Below, in pieces: positions 33,058 through 41,232 of a stretch of 64,000 bases of DNA; the first letter of the stretch is position 1; each line of letters starts with the position of its first letter. The notes under the pieces are model-generated. The model did not search any database and was not told the DNA's origin. It saw only the letters and a program-made list of their open reading frames with translations. A program made the position numbers and the translations under genes. The stretch lies in sequence record NC_023719.1; one strand, written 5' to 3'.

Positions 33058-33192
33058 TTTGTTGTTAATTAAATCATTACTATTTATAATAATAGAATAT
33101 CTTAAAAATTAAACAAAAGGTGCTGCAGGAACTGAGAGAATTGTTCTTTACCATTTCCGTGAGTGTTAAATGAATTATCAGCCTTGTTTAAA

Positions 33193-33348
33193 TACCTGAA
33201 GCGGTAAAAGCAGTTACTTCGACATTATGAGTCCGTTGTCGGTGGTTCGAGTCCACCTCCCGCGACCATTTTAATTTATTAACTATTAACGCGGGATAGC
33301 TCAGTTGGTAGAGCACGTATATTACACTGTTTTAAATAATCTCAGGTA
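33193..33348 (+). ncRNA. yrlA: YrlA-like Y RNA (Y1) with circularly permuted tRNA module
   Basis: Conserved stem TGAAGCGG..AGCAGTTACTTC / CTGTTTT..ATCTCA enclosing T-arm, acceptor hairpin, then D-arm. Confidence 0.85.
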
Positions 33349-33523
33349 GTACATAAAGAGAAGAGAAATCTTCTCTTTTTTTATATTCTGTTAAAAAAGT
33401 TATTTACAAGTACTCAATTTTATGATATAATAAATATATAAGGATTAAATTTTATTAATTTATGTAATTTTCTTTATTTAATCTTATATTAAGTACTGAA
33501 TCAAAATTAAAAGGAGAGATAAG

Positions 33524-34354
33524 ATGAAAAAAAATTCAAGACTTAAGAGAATAAGTGTTTTTAATGATCAGTTAGAAAAAGTTTTGCAACTCGCTAAATT
33601 TAATGGAGTTGAAACTGAACAATATTCTAAATCTGAATCTACACCGATGTCAGAGTTGAAATTTCTTTTATCATTTCAAACAACAACTGACATACCTAAA
33701 CTAGTTATTGGTATGGAACAAGATATTATTGATACCATTAAAGAATCTCAAAATGTGTTTGATAATTTATTCAATGAAGTTAATATTAAAGCGTTAAGCG
33801 ATGAGTATGTAGATAGATATCCTGAAGGTTATTTATATAATTATTTTTCTGAAGAAGAAATTGAAGAATTTAAAAAACAATATGCCGATCAACAAGGTAT
33901 AGATTATCAAGTTTCCGAGCAGGTGGATAATGATGTAGATACTTTATTAATGTATTTTGATGCAATCCAAAGAGCTAATGATGATAAATTAAATGAAATC
34001 GTTAATTCAAAAGGATTTAGTGATGCGGTAATGGTTGTGGAACAAAAAGGTTTTAAAATTGATGAAATAATTAAAGAGTATAACTATAATTTTGATGAAT
34101 TCAGCAGACTTAAATCTAAAAATAAAACCATTGAAACTATTGAAAAAGCATATAATAAAGTTAAAAATGATGACTCTGATACGTACAATGCTCCTGAAAC
34201 AGATGATACGGATGAGTTAATAAGAGGAGCAGCTAAATTAGCATATGAAAAGTTAGGTGTTGATATAGACGGTTACAGATACGCATTTCAAAATGATCTT
34301 TCGGTTTCAAAAATACAAATTATTGATGAAAAAACGTTTAAAATTTCAATGTAA
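33524..34354 (+). CDS. Acidic hypothetical protein with N-terminal SRLKRIS motif
   Basis: AAGGAG RBS, terminator follows. Confidence 0.8.
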   Translation: MKKNSRLKRISVFNDQLEKVLQLAKFNGVETEQYSKSESTPMSELKFLLSFQTTTDIPKLVIGMEQDIIDTIKESQNVFDNLFNEVNIKALSDEYVDRYPEGYLYNYFSEEEIEEFKKQYADQQGIDYQVSEQVDNDVDTLLMYFDAIQRANDDKLNEIVNSKGFSDAVMVVEQKGFKIDEIIKEYNYNFDEFSRLKSKNKTIETIEKAYNKVKNDDSDTYNAPETDDTDELIRGAAKLAYEKLGVDIDGYRYAFQNDLSVSKIQIIDEKTFKISM

Positions 34355-34461
34355 CATAAAAATTAGAGAAGAGAAATCTTCTCTTTTTTTTTTAACTTTA
34401 CGAAATAAACTGTTTACATTATCAAACAATTGTTATATAATAAATATATAAATAATTAATC

Positions 34462-34594
34462 AAAACCGATTGATTGCTGGTTTTAATAAACCTTATACCC
34501 TGAGTAGTCTATCTACTAGAAACTACTTGAAAACTAAAACTCCCCACCGTGCCGTTGGGCTATTCTCCGAGTATGGGGTTAGAGGAGAATAGAA
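34462..34594 (+). ncRNA. Putative structured RNA behind an early promoter
   Basis: No ORF or RBS; GC-rich helices 34489-98 / 34573-82 and 34562-70 / 34586-94. Confidence 0.55.
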
Positions 34595-34664
34595 AATATT
34601 TAAAAAAAAATTAAAAATTTTGTTAAATAAATTCTAACTATTGATAATAATATATCATCTTAAT

Positions 34665-34757
34665 AATCATTTATGAAGCGGAAAGAACAGTTACTTCAAC
34701 TTTAATCCAAACTTGAAACCAAAACTATACTGTTTTTTAAAAAACTCATAAATGATT
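34665..34757 (+). ncRNA. Y-RNA-like module Y2
   Basis: TGAAGCGG-AAAG-AACAGTTACTTC...CTGTTTT..AACTCA in a 12-bp inverted repeat. Confidence 0.8.
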
Positions 34758-34857
34758 CAGTTTTTATCTGAAAGAACTAAAAATCATAAGTTCGCTTTCA
34801 TATAGTTTCTTATTACTTTGTATAAGAGGATAACTATATAAAGTTAAATGTAAATCA

Positions 34858-34967
34858 ATTTAATTATAATTAATGAAGCGGGAAAACAGCTACTTCGATG
34901 AAAATCTATTACACAATTAAAGCTTTTTAATCTGTTTTCACTTATCTCATTGATTTTATTTTAAATT
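34858..34967 (+). ncRNA. Y-RNA-like module Y3
   Basis: TGAAGCGG-GAA-AACAGCTACTTC...CTGTTTTC..ATCTCA. Confidence 0.8.
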
Positions 34968-35091
34968 ACTTATTAATTATTGATGCGGACGTAACAGTTA
35001 CTTCATACAAGATAATGGTATAACATGATTCCTCGCGCTCAACGGGGAAACTACACTGTTACAAATTATCTCAATAATTAATAAGTAATTT
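34963..35091 (+). ncRNA. Y-RNA-like module Y4
   Basis: TGATGCGG-ACGT-AACAGTTACTTC...CTGTTAC..ATCTCA; perfect 21-bp closing inverted repeat. Confidence 0.82.
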
Positions 35092-35097
35092 AAAGAA

Positions 35098-35176
35098 TCC
35101 TTGTTGAAGCGGTAATAACAGTTACTTCATACATTTGGCGTACACAAGCACTGTTATAAATAATCTCAACAATGGA
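35098..35176 (+). ncRNA. Y-RNA-like module Y5
   Basis: TGAAGCGG-TAAT-AACAGTTACTTC...CTGTTAT..ATCTCA. Confidence 0.82.
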
Positions 35177-35191
35177 GTTTAAAAATCAATG

Positions 35192-35361
35192 ATAACTTAA
35201 TACATATATTGATGCGGGATGAACAGTTACTTCTAATATATTGAGAATATTACAAATAATAGATTTAACTTTTTGCTAGATCCTTGGTTGGTTTTTTATC
35301 AATTTACACACGGTTTTTTACTTACTGTTTGTTAAAGATCTCAATATATGTATTAAGTTAT
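35192..35361 (+). ncRNA. Y-RNA-like module Y6
   Basis: TGATGCGG-GATG-AACAGTTACTTC...CTGTTT..ATCTCA; perfect closing repeat of about 21 bp; directly upstream of TROVE gene. Confidence 0.8.
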
Positions 35362-35413
35362 TATTTTTTTTTTGAACATAATAATGTACATAAAAACTAG
35401 GGGGAATAATCTA

Positions 35414-37045
35414 ATGAGTAAAATGTCTAAAAAAGTAAAAGAAACACGTAAAGCAGAAGTACTAAAACCAGTAGAGAACTTTATGGGTGGAATTTCTTAT
35501 GAACATAATCCATTACTAACTCTAAAAATGGTTAGCGCAAGTTCTATTTTTGGTGAACCCCAATACTATCGCTCAGGTGAATTTGCAGAAAAGAACGTAA
35601 GAGATGGTTCTTATCGTATTAATTCTGTATTATCTAAGTACGATATGCTTTTAGGTAAAACGTTTAATGATAAAAACACAAGTGAGATCATGGAAGAAGT
35701 GATTGATGCTGCTTTATCATATGATTTTGAAGGAACTTTACGATGGGCTGTAGAGCTACGTAAAGATTTCTATATGCGTTTAAATCCTCAAGTTATCATG
35801 GTACGCGCTGCGATGCATGAAGATCGTGCTGAATTTAACGAGAAAAACCCAGGTTTATTTGCTCAAATTCAAAAAGATGTTATGAGTCGTGCCGATGAAC
35901 CATCTAGCCAGTTAACTTATTGGTTACACAATAAGGGTTCTAAATCCGGTATTCCTAGTATCTTAAAACGTACTTGGAAGAATCGTTTAGAAAGCATGAC
36001 TCGTTATGAAGCTGCTAAGTACAAAAATGCAAATGTCGGAATGATTGACACTGCTCGTATTTCACATGCGAAAGGTGATTTAGTTGGAGAATTATTAACT
36101 ACTGGTACTATTGAGGTAGATGATTCTCAAAGCACATGGAATGTTTTACGTTCTAATGGCCAATCTTGGAAAGAGATTTTATCAACTATTCAATTACCAC
36201 ACATGGCATTATTACGTAATTTACGTGGTATCTTTGAAGAAGTTAATAACAAAGATCTATGTAAAGAACAAATGGATCAATTAAAAGCTGGCGTAGTAAG
36301 AGGAAAGCAGTTCCCATTCCGTTATTACCAAGCTTATAAAATGGTTTCTATTAGCTCTGTTAATCATAAGCAATTAATCATGGATACCCTTGAGGAATGT
36401 ATTGATATTGCTTTAGAAAACATGCCTAAATTGAAAGGTAAAACGGTAGTTTTAACTGACAATTCCGGTAGTGCACATGGAGCCTTTACTTCAGAATATG
36501 GAACAGTAAATGTAGCGCAAATTAACAATTTGTCTGCCGTATTAACTGCTAAGAATGCTGAAGATGGAGAAGTATACACATTTGGTGACCAACTCAAAGA
36601 AATTCCGATTTCTAAGAGAAATGGAGCTTTAATCCAAGCGAAAGAAGTTGATCGCGTTGGACAAACAGTAGGTATGGGTACCGAACATGGTGTATGGTTG
36701 TACTTGGATAAGATCATTCGCAATAAGATCCATGTGGATAACTTATTTATCTATAGCGATATGCAAGCTGGTCATGGCCGTTTATATGGTACTAACGCAA
36801 GCCAATATAGCAAATATATTGTTAATGGTCATTATATTGACGTATATAAGCTAATTGAGGAATATCGTTCAAAGGTGAATCCGAAAGTAAATGTTTTCAC
36901 TGTTCAAACTGCGGGTTATTCCAATGTGTTGATTCCAGAAGTGATGCATAGAGGTTCTGTTTTATATGGTTGGACTGGTAAAGAGACTGTCTATGCTGAA
37001 CAGATGATTAAGCTTTGGGAACAAGCAGAAATGAAAAAGCAATAA
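35414..37045 (+). CDS. rsr: Ro60/TROVE domain RNA-binding protein with C-terminal vWA domain
   Basis: N.MGG.SY, SS.FGEPQYY, R.DFYMRLNP, LPHMALLRNLRG, QFPFRYY.AY, vWA MIDAS-like LTDNSGS, IYSDMQ, GWT; start moved to ATG 35414. Confidence 0.92.
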   Translation: MSKMSKKVKETRKAEVLKPVENFMGGISYEHNPLLTLKMVSASSIFGEPQYYRSGEFAEKNVRDGSYRINSVLSKYDMLLGKTFNDKNTSEIMEEVIDAALSYDFEGTLRWAVELRKDFYMRLNPQVIMVRAAMHEDRAEFNEKNPGLFAQIQKDVMSRADEPSSQLTYWLHNKGSKSGIPSILKRTWKNRLESMTRYEAAKYKNANVGMIDTARISHAKGDLVGELLTTGTIEVDDSQSTWNVLRSNGQSWKEILSTIQLPHMALLRNLRGIFEEVNNKDLCKEQMDQLKAGVVRGKQFPFRYYQAYKMVSISSVNHKQLIMDTLEECIDIALENMPKLKGKTVVLTDNSGSAHGAFTSEYGTVNVAQINNLSAVLTAKNAEDGEVYTFGDQLKEIPISKRNGALIQAKEVDRVGQTVGMGTEHGVWLYLDKIIRNKIHVDNLFIYSDMQAGHGRLYGTNASQYSKYIVNGHYIDVYKLIEEYRSKVNPKVNVFTVQTAGYSNVLIPEVMHRGSVLYGWTGKETVYAEQMIKLWEQAEMKKQ

Positions 37046-37141
37046 AACCATGAAACCTTACAGATAAATTCTGTAAGGTTTTTATTTACAAATTTTTAGA
37101 TATATGATATAATATAAATATAAAGAAAAGGAGATGATTGT

Positions 37142-39931: not shown

Positions 39932-40003
39932 GGTTCATTGGTCAAGTGGTAAAGACACCTTCCCTTACGGAAGGTAACATAGGTTCGACTCCTATATGGG
40001 CCG
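39932..40003 (+). tRNA. Glu/Asp-like tRNA body with aberrant anticodon loop (identity unresolved)
   Basis: Acceptor, D and T arms canonical; anticodon arm CCTTC-CCTTACG-GAAGG; CCA not encoded. Confidence 0.6.
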
Positions 40004-40059
40004 CCTAATATGTTGCAGAGATTAAGCTAATTGTAGCGCTGCAGCATTATTCTTAACGA

Positions 40060-40368
40060 GGGATTGTTAAGGATTCGACAGGGGAAAATAGTATAAGACA
40101 TGATACTCGTAAAGCATACGTTACATGCTAAGTTAAATATAACTAACAACGAATTACAAGTAGCCTAGTTAATAGGTGCCAAAACAATAGAGTTGCTCTA
40201 ACATCTATTTGAGGTTCAAAGATTTGAGCTATTTCTTACTTTAGAATAAAGTAAGTGGTGGAGCCTAGAGAAAACGCTGTAGAAACTAACTATTCAAATT
40301 GTAAATGGTATCAAACAAGTGTCTATATGAAAGTCTTCTGGACGCGGGTTCGACTCCCGCCAGTTCCA
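40060..40368 (+). ncRNA. ssrA: tmRNA; predicted tag (A)NNELQVA*
   Basis: 5' GGGATTGTTAAGGATTCGACAGGG; G3-U70; TAAATATAACT resume context; 3' GGACGCGGGTTCGACTCCCGCCAGTTCCA. Confidence 0.92.
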
Positions 40369-40631: not shown

Positions 40632-40766
40632 CTTATTTGGGGATTTTAGATCCTGTACATTTTGTACGAAAAATGCAAGTTCAGATTTACAGAGGCTTAA
40701 GGTCTCGTACACTAGATGTACAAAAATGATCGATTAAAGACTGCGATTTATTCTCAGTCTTTCTAT

Positions 40767-40846
40767 TTAACAAATTATTGAAGCGGTAGTAACAGATACT
40801 TCTTGCTGATGAAAAAACTGTTACAGTTAATCTCAATAGTTTTTAA
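40767..40846 (+). ncRNA. Y-RNA-like module Y7 (minimal, detached copy)
   Basis: TGAAGCGG-TAGT-AACAGATACTTC, 15-nt loop, CTGTTAC..ATCTCA. Confidence 0.78.
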
Positions 40847-41232
40847 CATATAATTTGCAAATAGTAGTATGGTATAGTAAAATGGGTCAAGTGTGTTGAT
40901 TCCCTTATTATTGCTATATTATTTGATTACATTAATAAAGCTGATATTAGTTAGTTACTTAGTGAAGCCACTGGTGAATCTAAGGGTTAGGGGAGATTAA
41001 TTGAATCAGCTTTTAATATGCCAAGTAGAGCTCTTTTAAGGGTGATAGTTCAAAGGACTGTATCGAAAGATTATGAGTGAAAATCTCATTACTTGGCTCC
41101 TCCAATGATATAGTGTGTTAAAGAGGTATCTAATTAGATATCTCTTTTTTATTTGTTTTTAAAAAATTGTTTATGTAGTTAAAGAATGATGATATAATTA
41201 AATTATAAAGAATAATATAAAGAGGTGATAGA

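What the first reader, a model, noticed from the sequence alone, without database searches (positions are those of the whole stretch)
33193..37045. Phage Ro60 (TROVE) gene served by an array of Y-RNA-like modules with a constant scaffold and variable loops
Seen: six modules upstream of the TROVE gene (33193, 34665, 34858, 34963, 35098, 35192) and a seventh at 40767 share TGA(A/T)GCGG-N3-4-A(A/G)CAG(T/C/A)TACTTC-[loop]-CTGTT-N5-8-A(T/A)CTCA. In each copy the bases before CAG co-vary with those after CTG (TAACAG/CTGTTA, AAAACAG/CTGTTTT). Each is clamped by its own AT-rich inverted repeat, up to 21+ bp perfect. Loops are unrelated and 106, 32, 35, 51, 22, 91 and 15 nt long. Known: bacterial Ro60 (Rsr of Deinococcus and Salmonella) binds Y RNAs encoded next to it, typically one or two, and they tether effectors such as PNPase. 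Inference: one Ro60 ring loaded with seven interchangeable RNA modules, i.e. a modular RNP whose specificity or effector is set by the loop, expressed as a polycistron and cut at the long stems. I know of no description of such an expanded phage array.
Basis: partly seen in the sequence, partly recalled or inferred. Interest (0 to 1): 0.93.

Follow-up and report, generated by a model that had tools for sequence, protein, structure and literature searches.

The report
Phage G Ro60 with seven Y RNAs
Bacillus phage G encodes a Ro60-type ring protein surrounded by seven small-RNA genes that share one conserved protein-docking stem but carry different loops; this is an enlarged version of the known Ro60/Y-RNA partnership, and similar arrays appear beside related genes in many uncultured phages.

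Summary
The window is Bacillus phage G, and it holds exactly seven copies of the scaffold, genome-wide.

Each copy has:
- an outer stem;
- a YGA[W]G/CUCR bulged helix;
- a GCRG//UAUU internal loop;
- a second stem ending in CAG/CUG;
- an invariant UUACUUC;
- a variable insert.

gp540 models as a Ro60 ring; its top 13 PDB matches are all Ro60.

The scaffold is not private to phage G:
- In 160 loci encoding gp540 homologues, 145 5'-halves lie on the TROVE strand and 2 on the other.
- 110 of them have a paired 3' half.
- 82 of 93 unique copies lie within 1.5 kb of the gene.
- Covariation supports both helices.
- The scaffold resembles the Ro60-binding stem of Rfam YrlA.

M1 is a YrlA-type permuted tRNA mimic. 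Ro60 and a Y-like RNA in phage G were already reported in 2014. M2-M7 lack any tRNA-like part, resemble YrlB, and appear undescribed.

Arrays of 3-6 occur in relatives, so seven is the top of a continuum and not a singular invention.

Binding, processing and loop function are inferred, not shown.

Verdict: a new variant of a known kind, of moderate-to-good interest.

The parts
33062..33090 (+). Promoter-like site (TTGTTA-17-TATAAT) upstream of M1
   Evidence: Consensus scan, 10 of 12 matches. This is a consensus match only; such sites are no more frequent here than in shuffles.
33193..33348 (+). M1: YrlA-type Y RNA. The scaffold encloses a permuted tRNA-like domain: T arm, a 7-bp acceptor-like stem followed by an encoded ACCA, an AU linker, then a D arm.
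   Evidence: Scaffold regex. Rfam YrlA RF02553 scores 36.2 bits, E=1.2e-6, on model positions 23-86, below the gathering score of 69. Fold: -43.1 kcal/mol, z=-2.7.
33355..33386 (+). Intrinsic terminator-like hairpin plus T tract that closes the M1 unit
   Evidence: The same hairpin sequence recurs at 34365-34384, after gp539.
34413..34441 (+). Promoter-like site (TTTACA-17-TATAAT, 11 of 12) heading the unit leader-M2-M6-gp540
   Evidence: No terminator-like site lies between it and 37053.
34448..34664 (+). ORF-free leader with a GC-richer, possibly pseudoknotted element (about 34536-34595). Role unknown.
   Evidence: Sequence. No Rfam hit. No homologue in the fetched loci.
34665..34757 (+). 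M2: Y-like RNA with a 32-nt, G-poor (3% G) loop
   Evidence: (z=-5.2). CM R1 scores 29.1 bits, E=6e-5.
34868..34955 (+). M3: Y-like RNA with a 35-nt, G-poor loop
   Evidence: CM R1 scores 26.4 bits, E=3e-4.
34960..35094 (+). M4: Y-like RNA with a roughly 24-bp AU-rich outer duplex. Its 51-nt loop holds a 7-bp/7-nt hairpin (UUCCUCG-CGCUCAA-CGGGGAA).
   Evidence: -40.4 kcal/mol, z=-8.5.
35101..35172 (+). M5: Y-like RNA with a 22-nt loop. It shares UUACUUCAUACA with M4.
   Evidence: CM R1 scores 50.4 bits, E=1.7e-10.
35188..35365 (+). M6: Y-like RNA with a roughly 25-bp AU-rich outer duplex and a 91-nt U-rich loop. It ends 34 nt before the gp540 ribosome-binding site.
   Evidence: -45.9 kcal/mol, z=-6.4.
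35414..37045 (+). gp540: Ro60/TROVE ring protein (HEAT-repeat ring plus a vWA domain with a DxSxS MIDAS motif)
   Evidence: Annotated as a putative TROVE ribonucleoprotein. AF2 model has pLDDT 81 and pTM 0.80. The top 13 Foldseek PDB hits are all Ro60, with TM up to 0.72. phmmer to phiLo Ro60 gives E=3e-9. D349-N-S351-G-S353 is invariant.
37053..37081 (+). Terminator-like hairpin that closes the gp540 unit
   Evidence: One search reports it on the - strand. The + strand reads AAACCTTACAGATAAATTCTGTAAGGTTTTTATTT.
40772..40842 (+). M7: the shortest Y-like RNA (15-nt loop). It lies 3.7 kb downstream of gp540, inside the tRNA/tmRNA cluster.
   Evidence: CM R1 scores 58.4 bits, E=1.4e-12.

Best explanation
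The locus is a phage Ro60-Y RNA system with an enlarged set of Y RNAs.

gp540 is a Ro60-type ring protein.

Seven genes (M1-M7) encode small RNAs whose 5' and 3' ends pair into one conserved docking structure. That structure has:
- an outer stem;
- a YGA[W]G/CUCR helix with one bulged A or U;
- an asymmetric internal loop with invariant G-C-R-G;
- a 7-9-bp stem closed by CAG/CUG;
- an invariant single-stranded UUACUUC.

This is a diverged form of the bulged-stem Ro60 site of YrlA and YrlB (motif GNCGAAN0-1G). I infer it is what gp540 binds.

The variable insert is the second, effector-facing module:
- In M1 it is a circularly permuted tRNA mimic of YrlA type. It has a 7-bp acceptor stem and an encoded ACCA, so it is a candidate RNase P substrate.
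- In M2-M7 it is a short, mostly unstructured, G-poor loop of YrlB type.

Inferred expression:
- M1 is made from its own promoter and terminator.
- M2-M6 are made as the roughly 960-nt leader of the gp540 mRNA and are released by processing.
- M7 comes from the tRNA/tmRNA cluster.

Inferred function, by analogy with Deinococcus, Salmonella and phage phiLo: each RNA either tethers the ring to a different partner, such as host PNPase, or gates its cavity. That would give the phage several Ro60 RNPs for RNA surveillance, repair or counter-defence during infection.

Shown here: the anatomy, the conservation, the covariation, the TROVE linkage and the Ro60 fold.

Inferred: transcription units, processing, binding and effector roles.
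For: - Seven copies, all on the + strand, against 0.3 expected by chance. There are exactly seven in the whole phage G genome.
- The gp540 model matches only Ro60 structures at the top: phiLo, D. radiodurans Rsr, human and Xenopus. The MIDAS motif is intact.
- The scaffold is conserved beside gp540 homologues. The strict structural scanner finds 54 copies on the TROVE strand and 2 on the other.
- An nhmmer profile of the 5' half finds 145 hits against 2 at E<=10. Of these, 110 have a base-paired 3' partner.
- 82 of 93 unique copies lie within 1.5 kb of the gene, although the loci span +/-6 kb.
- Covariation on 43 scaffolds: 95% of cells are paired, 13 of 17 pairs show double changes, and the score is 0.70 against 0.17 shuffled and about 0.1 for slid controls. 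Pairs not enforced by my scanner (columns 18/44 and 19/43) are 41-42 of 43 paired, with 5 pair types each.
- In 198 loci fetched blind by the 5' sequence pattern alone, a complete scaffold co-occurs with TROVE: 15 had both; 6 had a scaffold with no TROVE in the short locus, at least one of these (L184) being on a known TROVE contig; 176 had neither; 1 had TROVE only.
- No other neighbouring protein is conserved across the loci.
- The Rfam YrlA consensus ends (5' cggCgaAUGC..., 3' ...AcUuGucGccg) have the same CGA/UCG closing helix and internal-loop layout. Relatives carry the literal GGCGAAG motif.
- M1 holds the YrlA tRNA-like core.
- Literature precedents: Y RNAs sit upstream of Rsr and are processed from one precursor, with at least 2 Y RNAs per species, one of them tRNA-like (PMC4201824). 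Phage phiLo Ro60 binds two upstream Yrl RNAs and host PNPase (PMC12135203).
Against: - There is no expression, processing or binding data for phage G. Promoter and terminator calls are consensus matches at background frequency.
- No module reaches the Rfam YrlA gathering score, and M2-M7 hit nothing in Rfam.
- The phage G copies carry UGAAG or UGAUG, not the literal GNCGAA motif.
- gp540 misses the Pfam TROVE cut-off (20.6 against 23 bits).
- There is no comparative evidence for the M2-M7 loops, because no close relative of phage G exists in any collection searched; the best TROVE homologue is 63% identical.
- The scanner used to collect scaffolds demanded part of the pairing, which inflates the percentage paired.
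- No PNPase, RtcB or other known partner gene is linked.
Confidence: 0.75

Rival explanations
1. M2-M6 are mainly cis-acting operator sites in the 5' untranslated leader of the gp540 mRNA. Ro60 would bind its own leader to feed back on translation or stability, and the modules would not act as free trans-acting Y RNAs.
For: M2-M6 lie between the strongest promoter-like site (34413-34441) and the gp540 start, with no terminator in between. In the closest homologue locus, L364, a minimal scaffold (UUGAAGCGG...AUUCUCAGGGG) overlaps the Shine-Dalgarno sequence of the TROVE gene.
Against: M1 and M7 are separate units, outside and downstream of the mRNA. In many relatives the arrays lie downstream of TROVE: 40 of 93 unique copies. 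Five diverse loops are unnecessary for an operator. M. smegmatis YrlA and YrlB are also made from the Rsr precursor and still accumulate as free Rsr-bound RNAs (PMC4201824). The two roles are not mutually exclusive.
Confidence: 0.1
2. The modules act independently of gp540 as decoys or sponges for host factors. They would be tRNA-part mimics that soak up host nucleases or defence sensors. The shared stem would then be only a stabilising clamp or processing signal.
For: Many modules in relatives display tRNA parts. 26 have T plus D arms, 21 have a T arm only, and 18 of 93 carry anticodon-stem-loop-like hairpins against 3.5 +/- 1.7 in shuffles. The loci sit in tRNA clusters. A Ro60-like protein next to tRNA genes counters a defence system in phage Bas63 (PMC11482910).
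Against: A mere clamp would not keep invariant unpaired nucleotides (GCRG, UUACUUC). It would also not stay strictly linked to TROVE genes on the same strand. The phage G modules M2, M3 and M5-M7 contain no recognisable tRNA part.
Confidence: 0.1
3. The repeats are DNA-level elements, such as miniature inverted-repeat mobile elements or recombination or packaging sites, and not RNA genes.
For: Each unit is flanked by an AT-rich inverted repeat, and the units are clustered.
Against: The strand bias is extreme, 145 against 2. G-U pairs are tolerated and compensatory changes preserve pairing on one strand only. The copies sit in conserved positions beside one protein family across hosts from Bacillus to rumen Clostridia and Synergistaceae. 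M1 contains a YrlA RNA domain. No transposase is linked.
Confidence: 0.03

Closest known systems
YrlA / YrlB Y RNAs of Salmonella Typhimurium and Mycobacterium smegmatis (Chen et al. 2013, 2014; Rfam RF02553)
   Same: They are encoded next to Ro60 (Rsr) on the same strand. The 5' and 3' ends form a stem with the conserved CGAA(G)-type motif. One RNA carries a permuted tRNA-like domain, as M1 does, and another is a simpler hairpin, as M2-M7 are. In M. smegmatis they lie upstream and are co-transcribed with Rsr (PMC4201824). The Rfam consensus ends resemble the scaffold.
   Different: Phage G has seven RNAs where those species have two. The motif is diverged (UGAAG or UGAUG, with compensating CUCA). 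This clade adds an invariant CAG-UUACUUC. No module reaches the Rfam gathering score. The protein belongs to a distinct TROVE clade known almost entirely from metagenomes.
Thermus phage phiLo phiRo60 with Yrl1 and Yrl2 (PMC12135203; PDB 9KOP, 9L5Y)
   Same: It is a phage-encoded Ro60 with Y-like RNAs immediately upstream of the gene. It is the best structural match to gp540 (TM 0.72 normalised to the target; phmmer E=3e-9). Binding to host PNPase has been shown there.
   Different: It has two RNAs where phage G has seven. Sequence identity is only about 19-25%. No scaffold homology was examined. Function in phage G is untested.
Deinococcus radiodurans Rsr with Yrn1 and Yrn2 (the RYPER complex with PNPase)
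   Same: It shows the modular logic: a Ro-binding stem plus a loop that tethers an effector. [quoted passage not shown]
   Different: It is a cellular, stress-induced system. Its tRNA-like parts are arranged differently, and there are at most four candidate RNAs.
Metazoan Y RNA families (four human Y RNAs; the expanded stem-bulge RNAs of nematodes) - cited from my own knowledge, not tested here
   Same: One Ro60 protein is served by several paralogous RNAs that share the bulged stem and differ in their loops.
   Different: Those genes are dispersed or clustered Pol III genes in eukaryotes. There is no tRNA-like module and no linkage to the Ro60 gene.
E. coli phage Bas63 gp130, a Ro60-like protein upstream of a tRNA gene stretch that counters the ppl defence system (PMC11482910)
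   Same: It is a phage Ro60-like gene embedded in a tRNA cluster. The authors suggest that some of the annotated tRNAs are really Y RNAs. It is the only functional phenotype I found for a phage Ro60.
   Different: It was not detected as a homologue of gp540 by tblastn in the phage collection listing. No scaffold analysis was done, and the host and defence context differ.

Membership tests
Y RNA (Ro60-associated non-coding RNA) | Encoded close to a Ro60/TROVE gene and on the same strand (the bacterial and phage criterion of Chen et al. 2014: within 4 kb, same strand) | tested here: met
   M1 starts 2.2 kb upstream of gp540, M2-M6 start 0.2-0.75 kb upstream, and M7 starts 3.7 kb downstream. All are on the + strand. 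Across the family, 82 of 93 unique copies lie within 1.5 kb, and the strand bias is 145 against 2.
Y RNA (Ro60-associated non-coding RNA) | The 5' and 3' ends pair into a stem that carries a conserved bulged-helix or internal-loop Ro60 site | tested here: met
   Folds. Covariation on 43 scaffolds gives 95% paired and 13 of 17 pairs with double changes. The bulged W and the GCRG loop are invariant or nearly so.
Y RNA (Ro60-associated non-coding RNA) | The literal bacterial motif GNCGAAN0-1G near the 5' end (PMC4201824) | tested here: inconclusive
   The phage G copies read UGAAGCGG or UGAUGCGG, with U replacing C and compensated by CUCA on the 3' side. Relatives L003-L005 read GGCGAAGCGG, which fits the motif.
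Y RNA (Ro60-associated non-coding RNA) | Physically bound by Ro60 and dependent on it for accumulation | not testable with these tools
   This needs RIP, EMSA or a Northern blot in a gp540 deletion.
YrlA (Rfam RF02553) | Central tRNA-like domain (T arm, acceptor-like stem, D arm) | tested here: met
   Met for M1 only: it aligns to model positions 23-86 with GGUUCGAGUCC and AGCUCAGUUGGUAGAGC. M2-M7 have no T or D arm, so they are not YrlA.
YrlA (Rfam RF02553) | Score at or above the curated gathering threshold (69 bits) | tested here: not met
   M1 scores 36.2 bits, and nothing else in the array scores. Ten related loci also give no YrlA hit at gathering.
Ro60 / TROVE protein (gp540) | Ring of HEAT-like helical repeats closed by a C-terminal vWA domain | tested here: met
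   The AF2 model has pLDDT 81.4 and pTM 0.80. Foldseek ranks 1-13 are all Ro60 structures aligned over their full length, E 4e-14 to 2e-8, TM 0.50-0.72.
Ro60 / TROVE protein (gp540) | MIDAS motif (DxSxS plus downstream T and D) in the vWA domain | tested here: met
   D349, S351, S353, T423 and D449 are invariant in 20 homologues. This was assessed by sequence only.
Ro60 / TROVE protein (gp540) | Pfam TROVE (PF05731) gathering score | tested here: not met
   20.6 bits against a cut-off of 23, E=2.9e-4, over residues 250-311 only. This is a divergent clade.
tRNA genes | Cloverleaf in the natural order with a constrained anticodon | tested here: not met
   ARAGORN and Rfam call no tRNA inside M1-M7. 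M1 is circularly permuted.

The most novel reading that the evidence does not exclude
A large, mostly uncultured clade of phage Ro60 proteins works as a multi-adaptor hub. One ring is programmed by a genome-encoded library of up to seven Y-like RNAs. Their inserts are mix-and-match tRNA parts (T arm, D arm, acceptor-CCA, anticodon stem-loops with different anticodons) or unstructured tethers. Each insert would recruit or decoy a different host RNA enzyme or anti-phage nuclease. On this reading the array is a counter-defence or tRNA-protection toolkit linked to the phage's tRNA and tmRNA island. Phage G is the only cultured member in which this could be tested.
Probability: 0.25. Interest if true: 0.8.

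Novelty: new variant of a known kind. Interest (0 to 1): 0.55.

Why it matters
What bacterial and phage Y RNAs do, and why Ro60 needs more than one of them, is still largely open. Studied systems offer only one or two RNAs each.

This locus contributes three things:
- It shows one Ro60 with seven co-encoded RNAs that keep a strictly conserved docking structure while their second module varies freely.
- It defines a sequence and structure consensus that current Rfam models miss.
- It shows that tandem arrays are common in a large phage TROVE clade embedded in tRNA islands.

Phage G grows on a laboratory Bacillus (Priestia) megaterium strain. The question "does each Y RNA give Ro60 a different partner?" therefore becomes directly testable by pull-downs and deletions.

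A reported anti-defence phenotype of a Ro60-like gene in phage Bas63 suggests what to look for.

The finding is an extension of a known system, not a new principle.

Tried and rejected
- **Rfam on the array.** I ran Rfam at gathering and at E<=10 on the window and the array. The only hit was a sub-threshold YrlA core in M1; M2-M7 gave nothing.
- **Rfam on related loci.** Ten related loci gave no YrlA hit at gathering. Several scaffold inserts are called tRNA instead.
- **Pattern-only scans of IMG/VR.** Most hits were chance matches, with no 3' partner and no TROVE gene nearby. They became informative only once the 3' partner was required.
- **Covariance model.** I built model R1 from scaffolds with the insert trimmed. 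It recovers M7, M5, M2 and M3 and part of M4. It cannot span the long inserts of M1 and M6, which I attribute to a limit on match length. It found no further copy in the window.
- **Guide-RNA idea.** The longest complementarity of each loop to the 64-kb window is 9-13 nt, no better than shuffled loops. There is no support within the window.
- **Leader and flanks.** I looked for homologues of the 34448-34664 leader, the M1 leader and the M7 flanks in all fetched loci. Only AT-rich noise came back.
- **Second conserved partner protein.** gp537-gp556 searched against about 165 TROVE loci gave one weak gp538 hit and nothing else. Pfam on four neighbours (gp538, gp539, gp541, gp542) was empty.
- **Neighbour annotation.** Two homologue contigs showed no RtcB, PNPase or ligase linkage.
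- **Shared loop motif.** Among the inserts with no T arm I found only AT-rich k-mers.
- **Literature gaps.** The supplement of Chen et al. 2014, which holds the phage table, and the 2020 Annual Review are not held. I could not see which phage G coordinates were reported.
- **CRISPR-like array.** I rejected this: the units are hairpins with conserved ends and variable interiors, not direct repeats with spacers.

Full report
**Identity of the window.** The region 33100-37100 is 100% identical to Bacillus phage G (JN638751 / NC_023719), the 497.5-kb jumbo phage of Bacillus megaterium. Window position equals record position minus 372,000. The record annotates gp540 (window 35414-37045) as a "putative TROVE domain ribonucleoprotein". 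It also annotates a surrounding tRNA/tmRNA island. It annotates nothing in the ORF-free stretches that hold the modules.

**Check of the observation.**
- A regex for the 5' motif hits at 33197, 34674, 34874, 34981, 35105, 35210 and 40779. Each hit is followed by CTGTT-N-(A/T)CTCA.
- CAGHTACTTC occurs 7 times, all on the + strand, against 0.30 expected; 0 of 100 shuffles reach 7.
- Loop lengths (106, 32, 35, 51, 22, 91 and 15 nt), the co-varying bases around CAG/CTG, and the AT-rich clamps are all as described. Two of the clamps are about 24-25-bp perfect duplexes, in M4 and M6.
- A complete IMG/VR scan with YGAWGCGG-N3-6-CAGHTACTTC returns exactly these seven in the whole phage G genome.
- A covariance model of the scaffold finds no further significant copy in the window.

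**The protein.**
- Pfam TROVE is only sub-threshold (20.6 against 23 bits).
- phmmer finds the Thermus phage phiLo Ro60 structures at E=3e-9.
- An AlphaFold2 model built on 20 homologues has pLDDT 81 and pTM 0.80.
- Its 13 best PDB matches are all Ro60: phiLo, D. radiodurans Rsr, human and Xenopus. They align over the full length with TM up to 0.72.
- The vWA MIDAS residues (D349, S351, S353, T423, D449) are invariant.

gp540 is therefore a Ro60-fold protein from a divergent clade. That clade has thousands of members at 50-63% identity, almost all from metagenomes or MAGs plus a few Bacillus genomes. Among 50,697 deposited phage genomes, phage G is the only member; the next best hit is 37% identical.

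**The scaffold is a family feature.** I fetched 160 loci encoding gp540 homologues, 80 from IMG/VR contigs and 80 from GTDB genomes.
- A strict structural scanner required the 5' motif, a base-paired CUG partner, the bulged helix and an outer stem. It found 54 complete scaffolds on the TROVE strand and 2 on the other.
- An nhmmer profile of the 5' half alone gives 145 hits against 2 at E<=10.
- 110 of those hits have a structurally valid 3' partner.
- 82 of 93 unique copies start within 1.5 kb of the gene, although the loci span +/-6 kb.

The consensus is: [outer stem] Y-G-A-[W]-G-C-R-G-N4-6-[NNNN CAG]-UUACUUC ... insert ... [CUG NNNN]-N2-4-UAUUCUC-R [outer stem].

On 43 scaffolds with the insert trimmed:
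- 95% of cells are paired.
- 13 of 17 pairs show changes on both sides.
- The covariation score is 0.70, against 0.17 for shuffles and about 0.1 for slid registers.

Part of the pairing was demanded by my scanner. However, the pairs it did not enforce (columns 18/44, 19/43, 3/60, 4/59) are also 39-42 of 43 paired, with 4-5 pair types each. The helix next to the bulge shows textbook compensation:
- UGAWG...CUCA
- CGAWG...CUCG
- UAAAG...CUUA
- CAAAG...CUUG
- CCUAG...CAGG
- UGUAG...CACA

**Test of independence from TROVE.** Two blind scans of IMG/VR with the 5' sequence pattern alone returned 198 loci. Most hits are chance matches, with no 3' partner and no TROVE gene in the locus.

| Complete scaffold | TROVE in locus | Loci |
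|---|---|---|
| yes | yes | 15 |
| yes | no (short locus) | 6 |
| no | no | 176 |
| no | yes | 1 |

At least one of the six (L184) lies on a contig already known to carry TROVE. No other neighbouring phage G protein is conserved across these loci, which leaves TROVE as the only consistent partner.

**Relation to known Y RNAs.**
- Chen et al. 2014 (PMC4201824) defined bacterial and phage YrlA RNAs. Their features are a 5' motif GNCGAAN0-1G, proposed as the Rsr contact, and a central tRNA-like domain.
- They reported candidates in 254 bacteria and 22 phages.
[quoted passage not shown] In M. smegmatis these are co-transcribed upstream of Rsr.
- The phiLo paper states that Y RNA-like RNAs and Ro60 had already been identified in Bacillus phage G, citing that study (PMC12135203).

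The Rfam YrlA consensus ends are 5' cggCgaAUGCuuggGgaaCUA and 3' uucCccaaAaAcUuGucGccg. They have the same CGA/UCG closing helix, asymmetric internal loop and 7-bp second stem as the scaffold. Relatives L003-L005 carry the literal GGCGAAG motif.

M1's insert aligns to the YrlA core: T arm GGUGGUUCGAGUCCACC, a stem, and D arm GCUCAGUUGGUAGAGC. It scores 36 bits, E=1e-6, which is below the gathering score of 69. Read directly, the stem is a 7-bp acceptor (CGCGGGA/UCCCGCG) followed by an encoded ACCA and an AU-rich linker. That resembles the M. smegmatis YrlA, which is cut by RNase P.

M2-M7 have no T or D arm and no Rfam match. Their loops are short and G-poor; M2 is 3% G and M3 is 7% G. They fit the YrlB type. 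I found no paper describing them or any phage Y-RNA array. I could not read the 2014 supplement.

**How unusual is seven?** The per-locus counts of complete scaffolds are:

| Copies per locus | 1 | 2 | 3 | 4 | 6 | 7 |
|---|---|---|---|---|---|---|
| Loci | 25 | 11 | 8 | 5 | 2 | 1 |

- The two six-copy loci are L013 and L014. The seven-copy locus is phage G.
- The six copies of L013 and the five of L007 fold as scaffolds in direct succession, immediately downstream of TROVE.
- The closest homologue of gp540 (63% identity, L364, a Bacillus-type phage contig with SASP genes) has five full copies plus a minimal one in the 1.3-kb gap upstream of TROVE. Its post-stem motif has drifted (UACAUCG or UUCAUCG), so my profile scored four of the five full copies only weakly.
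- The counts are therefore lower bounds, and phage G is the upper end of a continuum.
- All seven phage G copies share lineage-specific details: U at the first helix position, and AUCUCA where the family has AUUCUCR. M4 and M5 also share UUACUUCAUACA. This suggests local duplication or co-evolution with gp540.

**Expression (inferred only).**
- The best sigma-A-like sites are at 33062-33090, 33403-33431, 34413-34441 and 37085-37113.
- Terminator-like hairpins are at 33355-33378, 34365-34384 and 37053-37081.
- Together these parse the region into four units: M1 alone; gp539 alone; leader + M2-M6 + gp540; and the next gene.
- M3, M4, M5 and M6 abut one another with 3-15-nt spacers.
- Only M4 and M6 have duplexes long enough for RNase III.
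- M7 sits between tRNA-Gly and a terminator at 41120-41147, inside the tRNA/tmRNA island.
- The frequency of promoter-like matches equals that in shuffles, so none of this counts as evidence of function.

**Mechanism.** The best-supported reading is the standard modular Y-RNA model applied to an enlarged set.
- gp540 would bind the conserved bulged stem and internal loop. The invariant unpaired GCRG and UUACUUC are likely protein contacts.
- The insert would be the second module.
- By analogy, Y RNA tethers Rsr to PNPase in D. radiodurans and Salmonella, and phiLo Ro60-Yrl complexes bind host PNPase (PMC4201824, PMC12135203).
- A Ro60-like protein next to tRNA genes in phage Bas63 counters the ppl defence system (PMC11482910).
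- What the individual phage G loops do is unknown. They show no complementarity beyond chance to the window, no shared motif, and no conserved counterpart.

**Rivals.** I considered a cis-regulatory leader, Ro60-independent decoys, and DNA-level repeats. They are weighed in the Rival explanations section. The first may coexist with the main reading.

**Verdict.** This is a new variant of the known Ro60/Y-RNA system: six apparently undescribed YrlB-like paralogues, a clade-specific scaffold consensus, and tandem arrays. It sits in the only cultured phage of its clade.

Noticed in passing
L013 7793-8560; L007 7672-8440; L364 5100-6117; L082 5165-5800; L360 9346-9700: Tandem arrays of 3-6 scaffold RNAs lie directly beside gp540-type TROVE genes in uncultured phages and in Bacillus genomes. 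They mix YrlA-type inserts with others. Phage G is therefore not unique in having an array.
   Followed up: yes
For example L013 7803-7830, L015 7869-7890, L009 4600-4620, L007 7993-8010, L004 7998-8015: Many inserts in relatives contain anticodon-stem-loop-like hairpins: a 5-bp stem with a 7-nt loop YU-NNN-R-N. The 'anticodons' differ (UUU, GCU, CAU, GUU, UCU, GUC and others). 18 of 93 unique modules have one, against 3.5 +/- 1.7 in shuffles. None occurs in phage G.
   Followed up: partly
L003 7701-7773; L004 7745-7817; L005 1826-1898: In three related phages the Y scaffold encloses a tRNA-like element in the natural order. ARAGORN calls it Lys(ttt), Ser(gct, only 73 nt) and Stop(tta) respectively. 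The anticodon is not conserved, so it looks like a mimic and not a working tRNA.
   Followed up: partly
L364 6078-6117: A minimal scaffold (UUGAAGCGG-N10-AUUCUCAGGGG) has a 3' strand that overlaps the Shine-Dalgarno sequence of the TROVE gene. This is a possible autoregulatory Ro60 site. Phage G has no equivalent.
   Followed up: no
window 34448-34664: An ORF-free leader of about 215 nt lies ahead of M2. It contains a GC-richer element (CUCCCCA...CUAUUCUCC...UGGGG...GGAGAAUAG, about 34536-34595) that could form an H-type pseudoknot. It has no Rfam hit and no homologue in the fetched loci.
   Followed up: partly
window 34795-34848: A hairpin between M2 and M3 contains UUAUUACUUUG. It may be a decayed eighth module. 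The covariance model did not detect it.
   Followed up: no
window 33357-33378 and 34365-34384: The same terminator hairpin sequence (AGAGAAGAGAAATCTTCTCT) closes both the M1 unit and gp539.
   Followed up: no
window 39932-40005 and 40060-40368: A tRNA with anticodon UUA, which would read the UAA stop codon, lies directly upstream of a phage-encoded tmRNA with tag AKLNITNNELQVA. Both are annotated in the record.
   Followed up: no
window 40636-41230: An ORF-poor stretch of about 600 nt surrounds M7 and ends in a terminator at 41120-41147. It may hold further unannotated RNAs. Rfam gives only noise there.
   Followed up: no
L362 564-4493: Type I CRISPR-Cas genes (Cas6, a CXXC-CXXC large subunit, Cas7/DevR, Cas5) lie about 5.5 kb upstream of a gp540 homologue on a 169-kb contig.
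   Followed up: no
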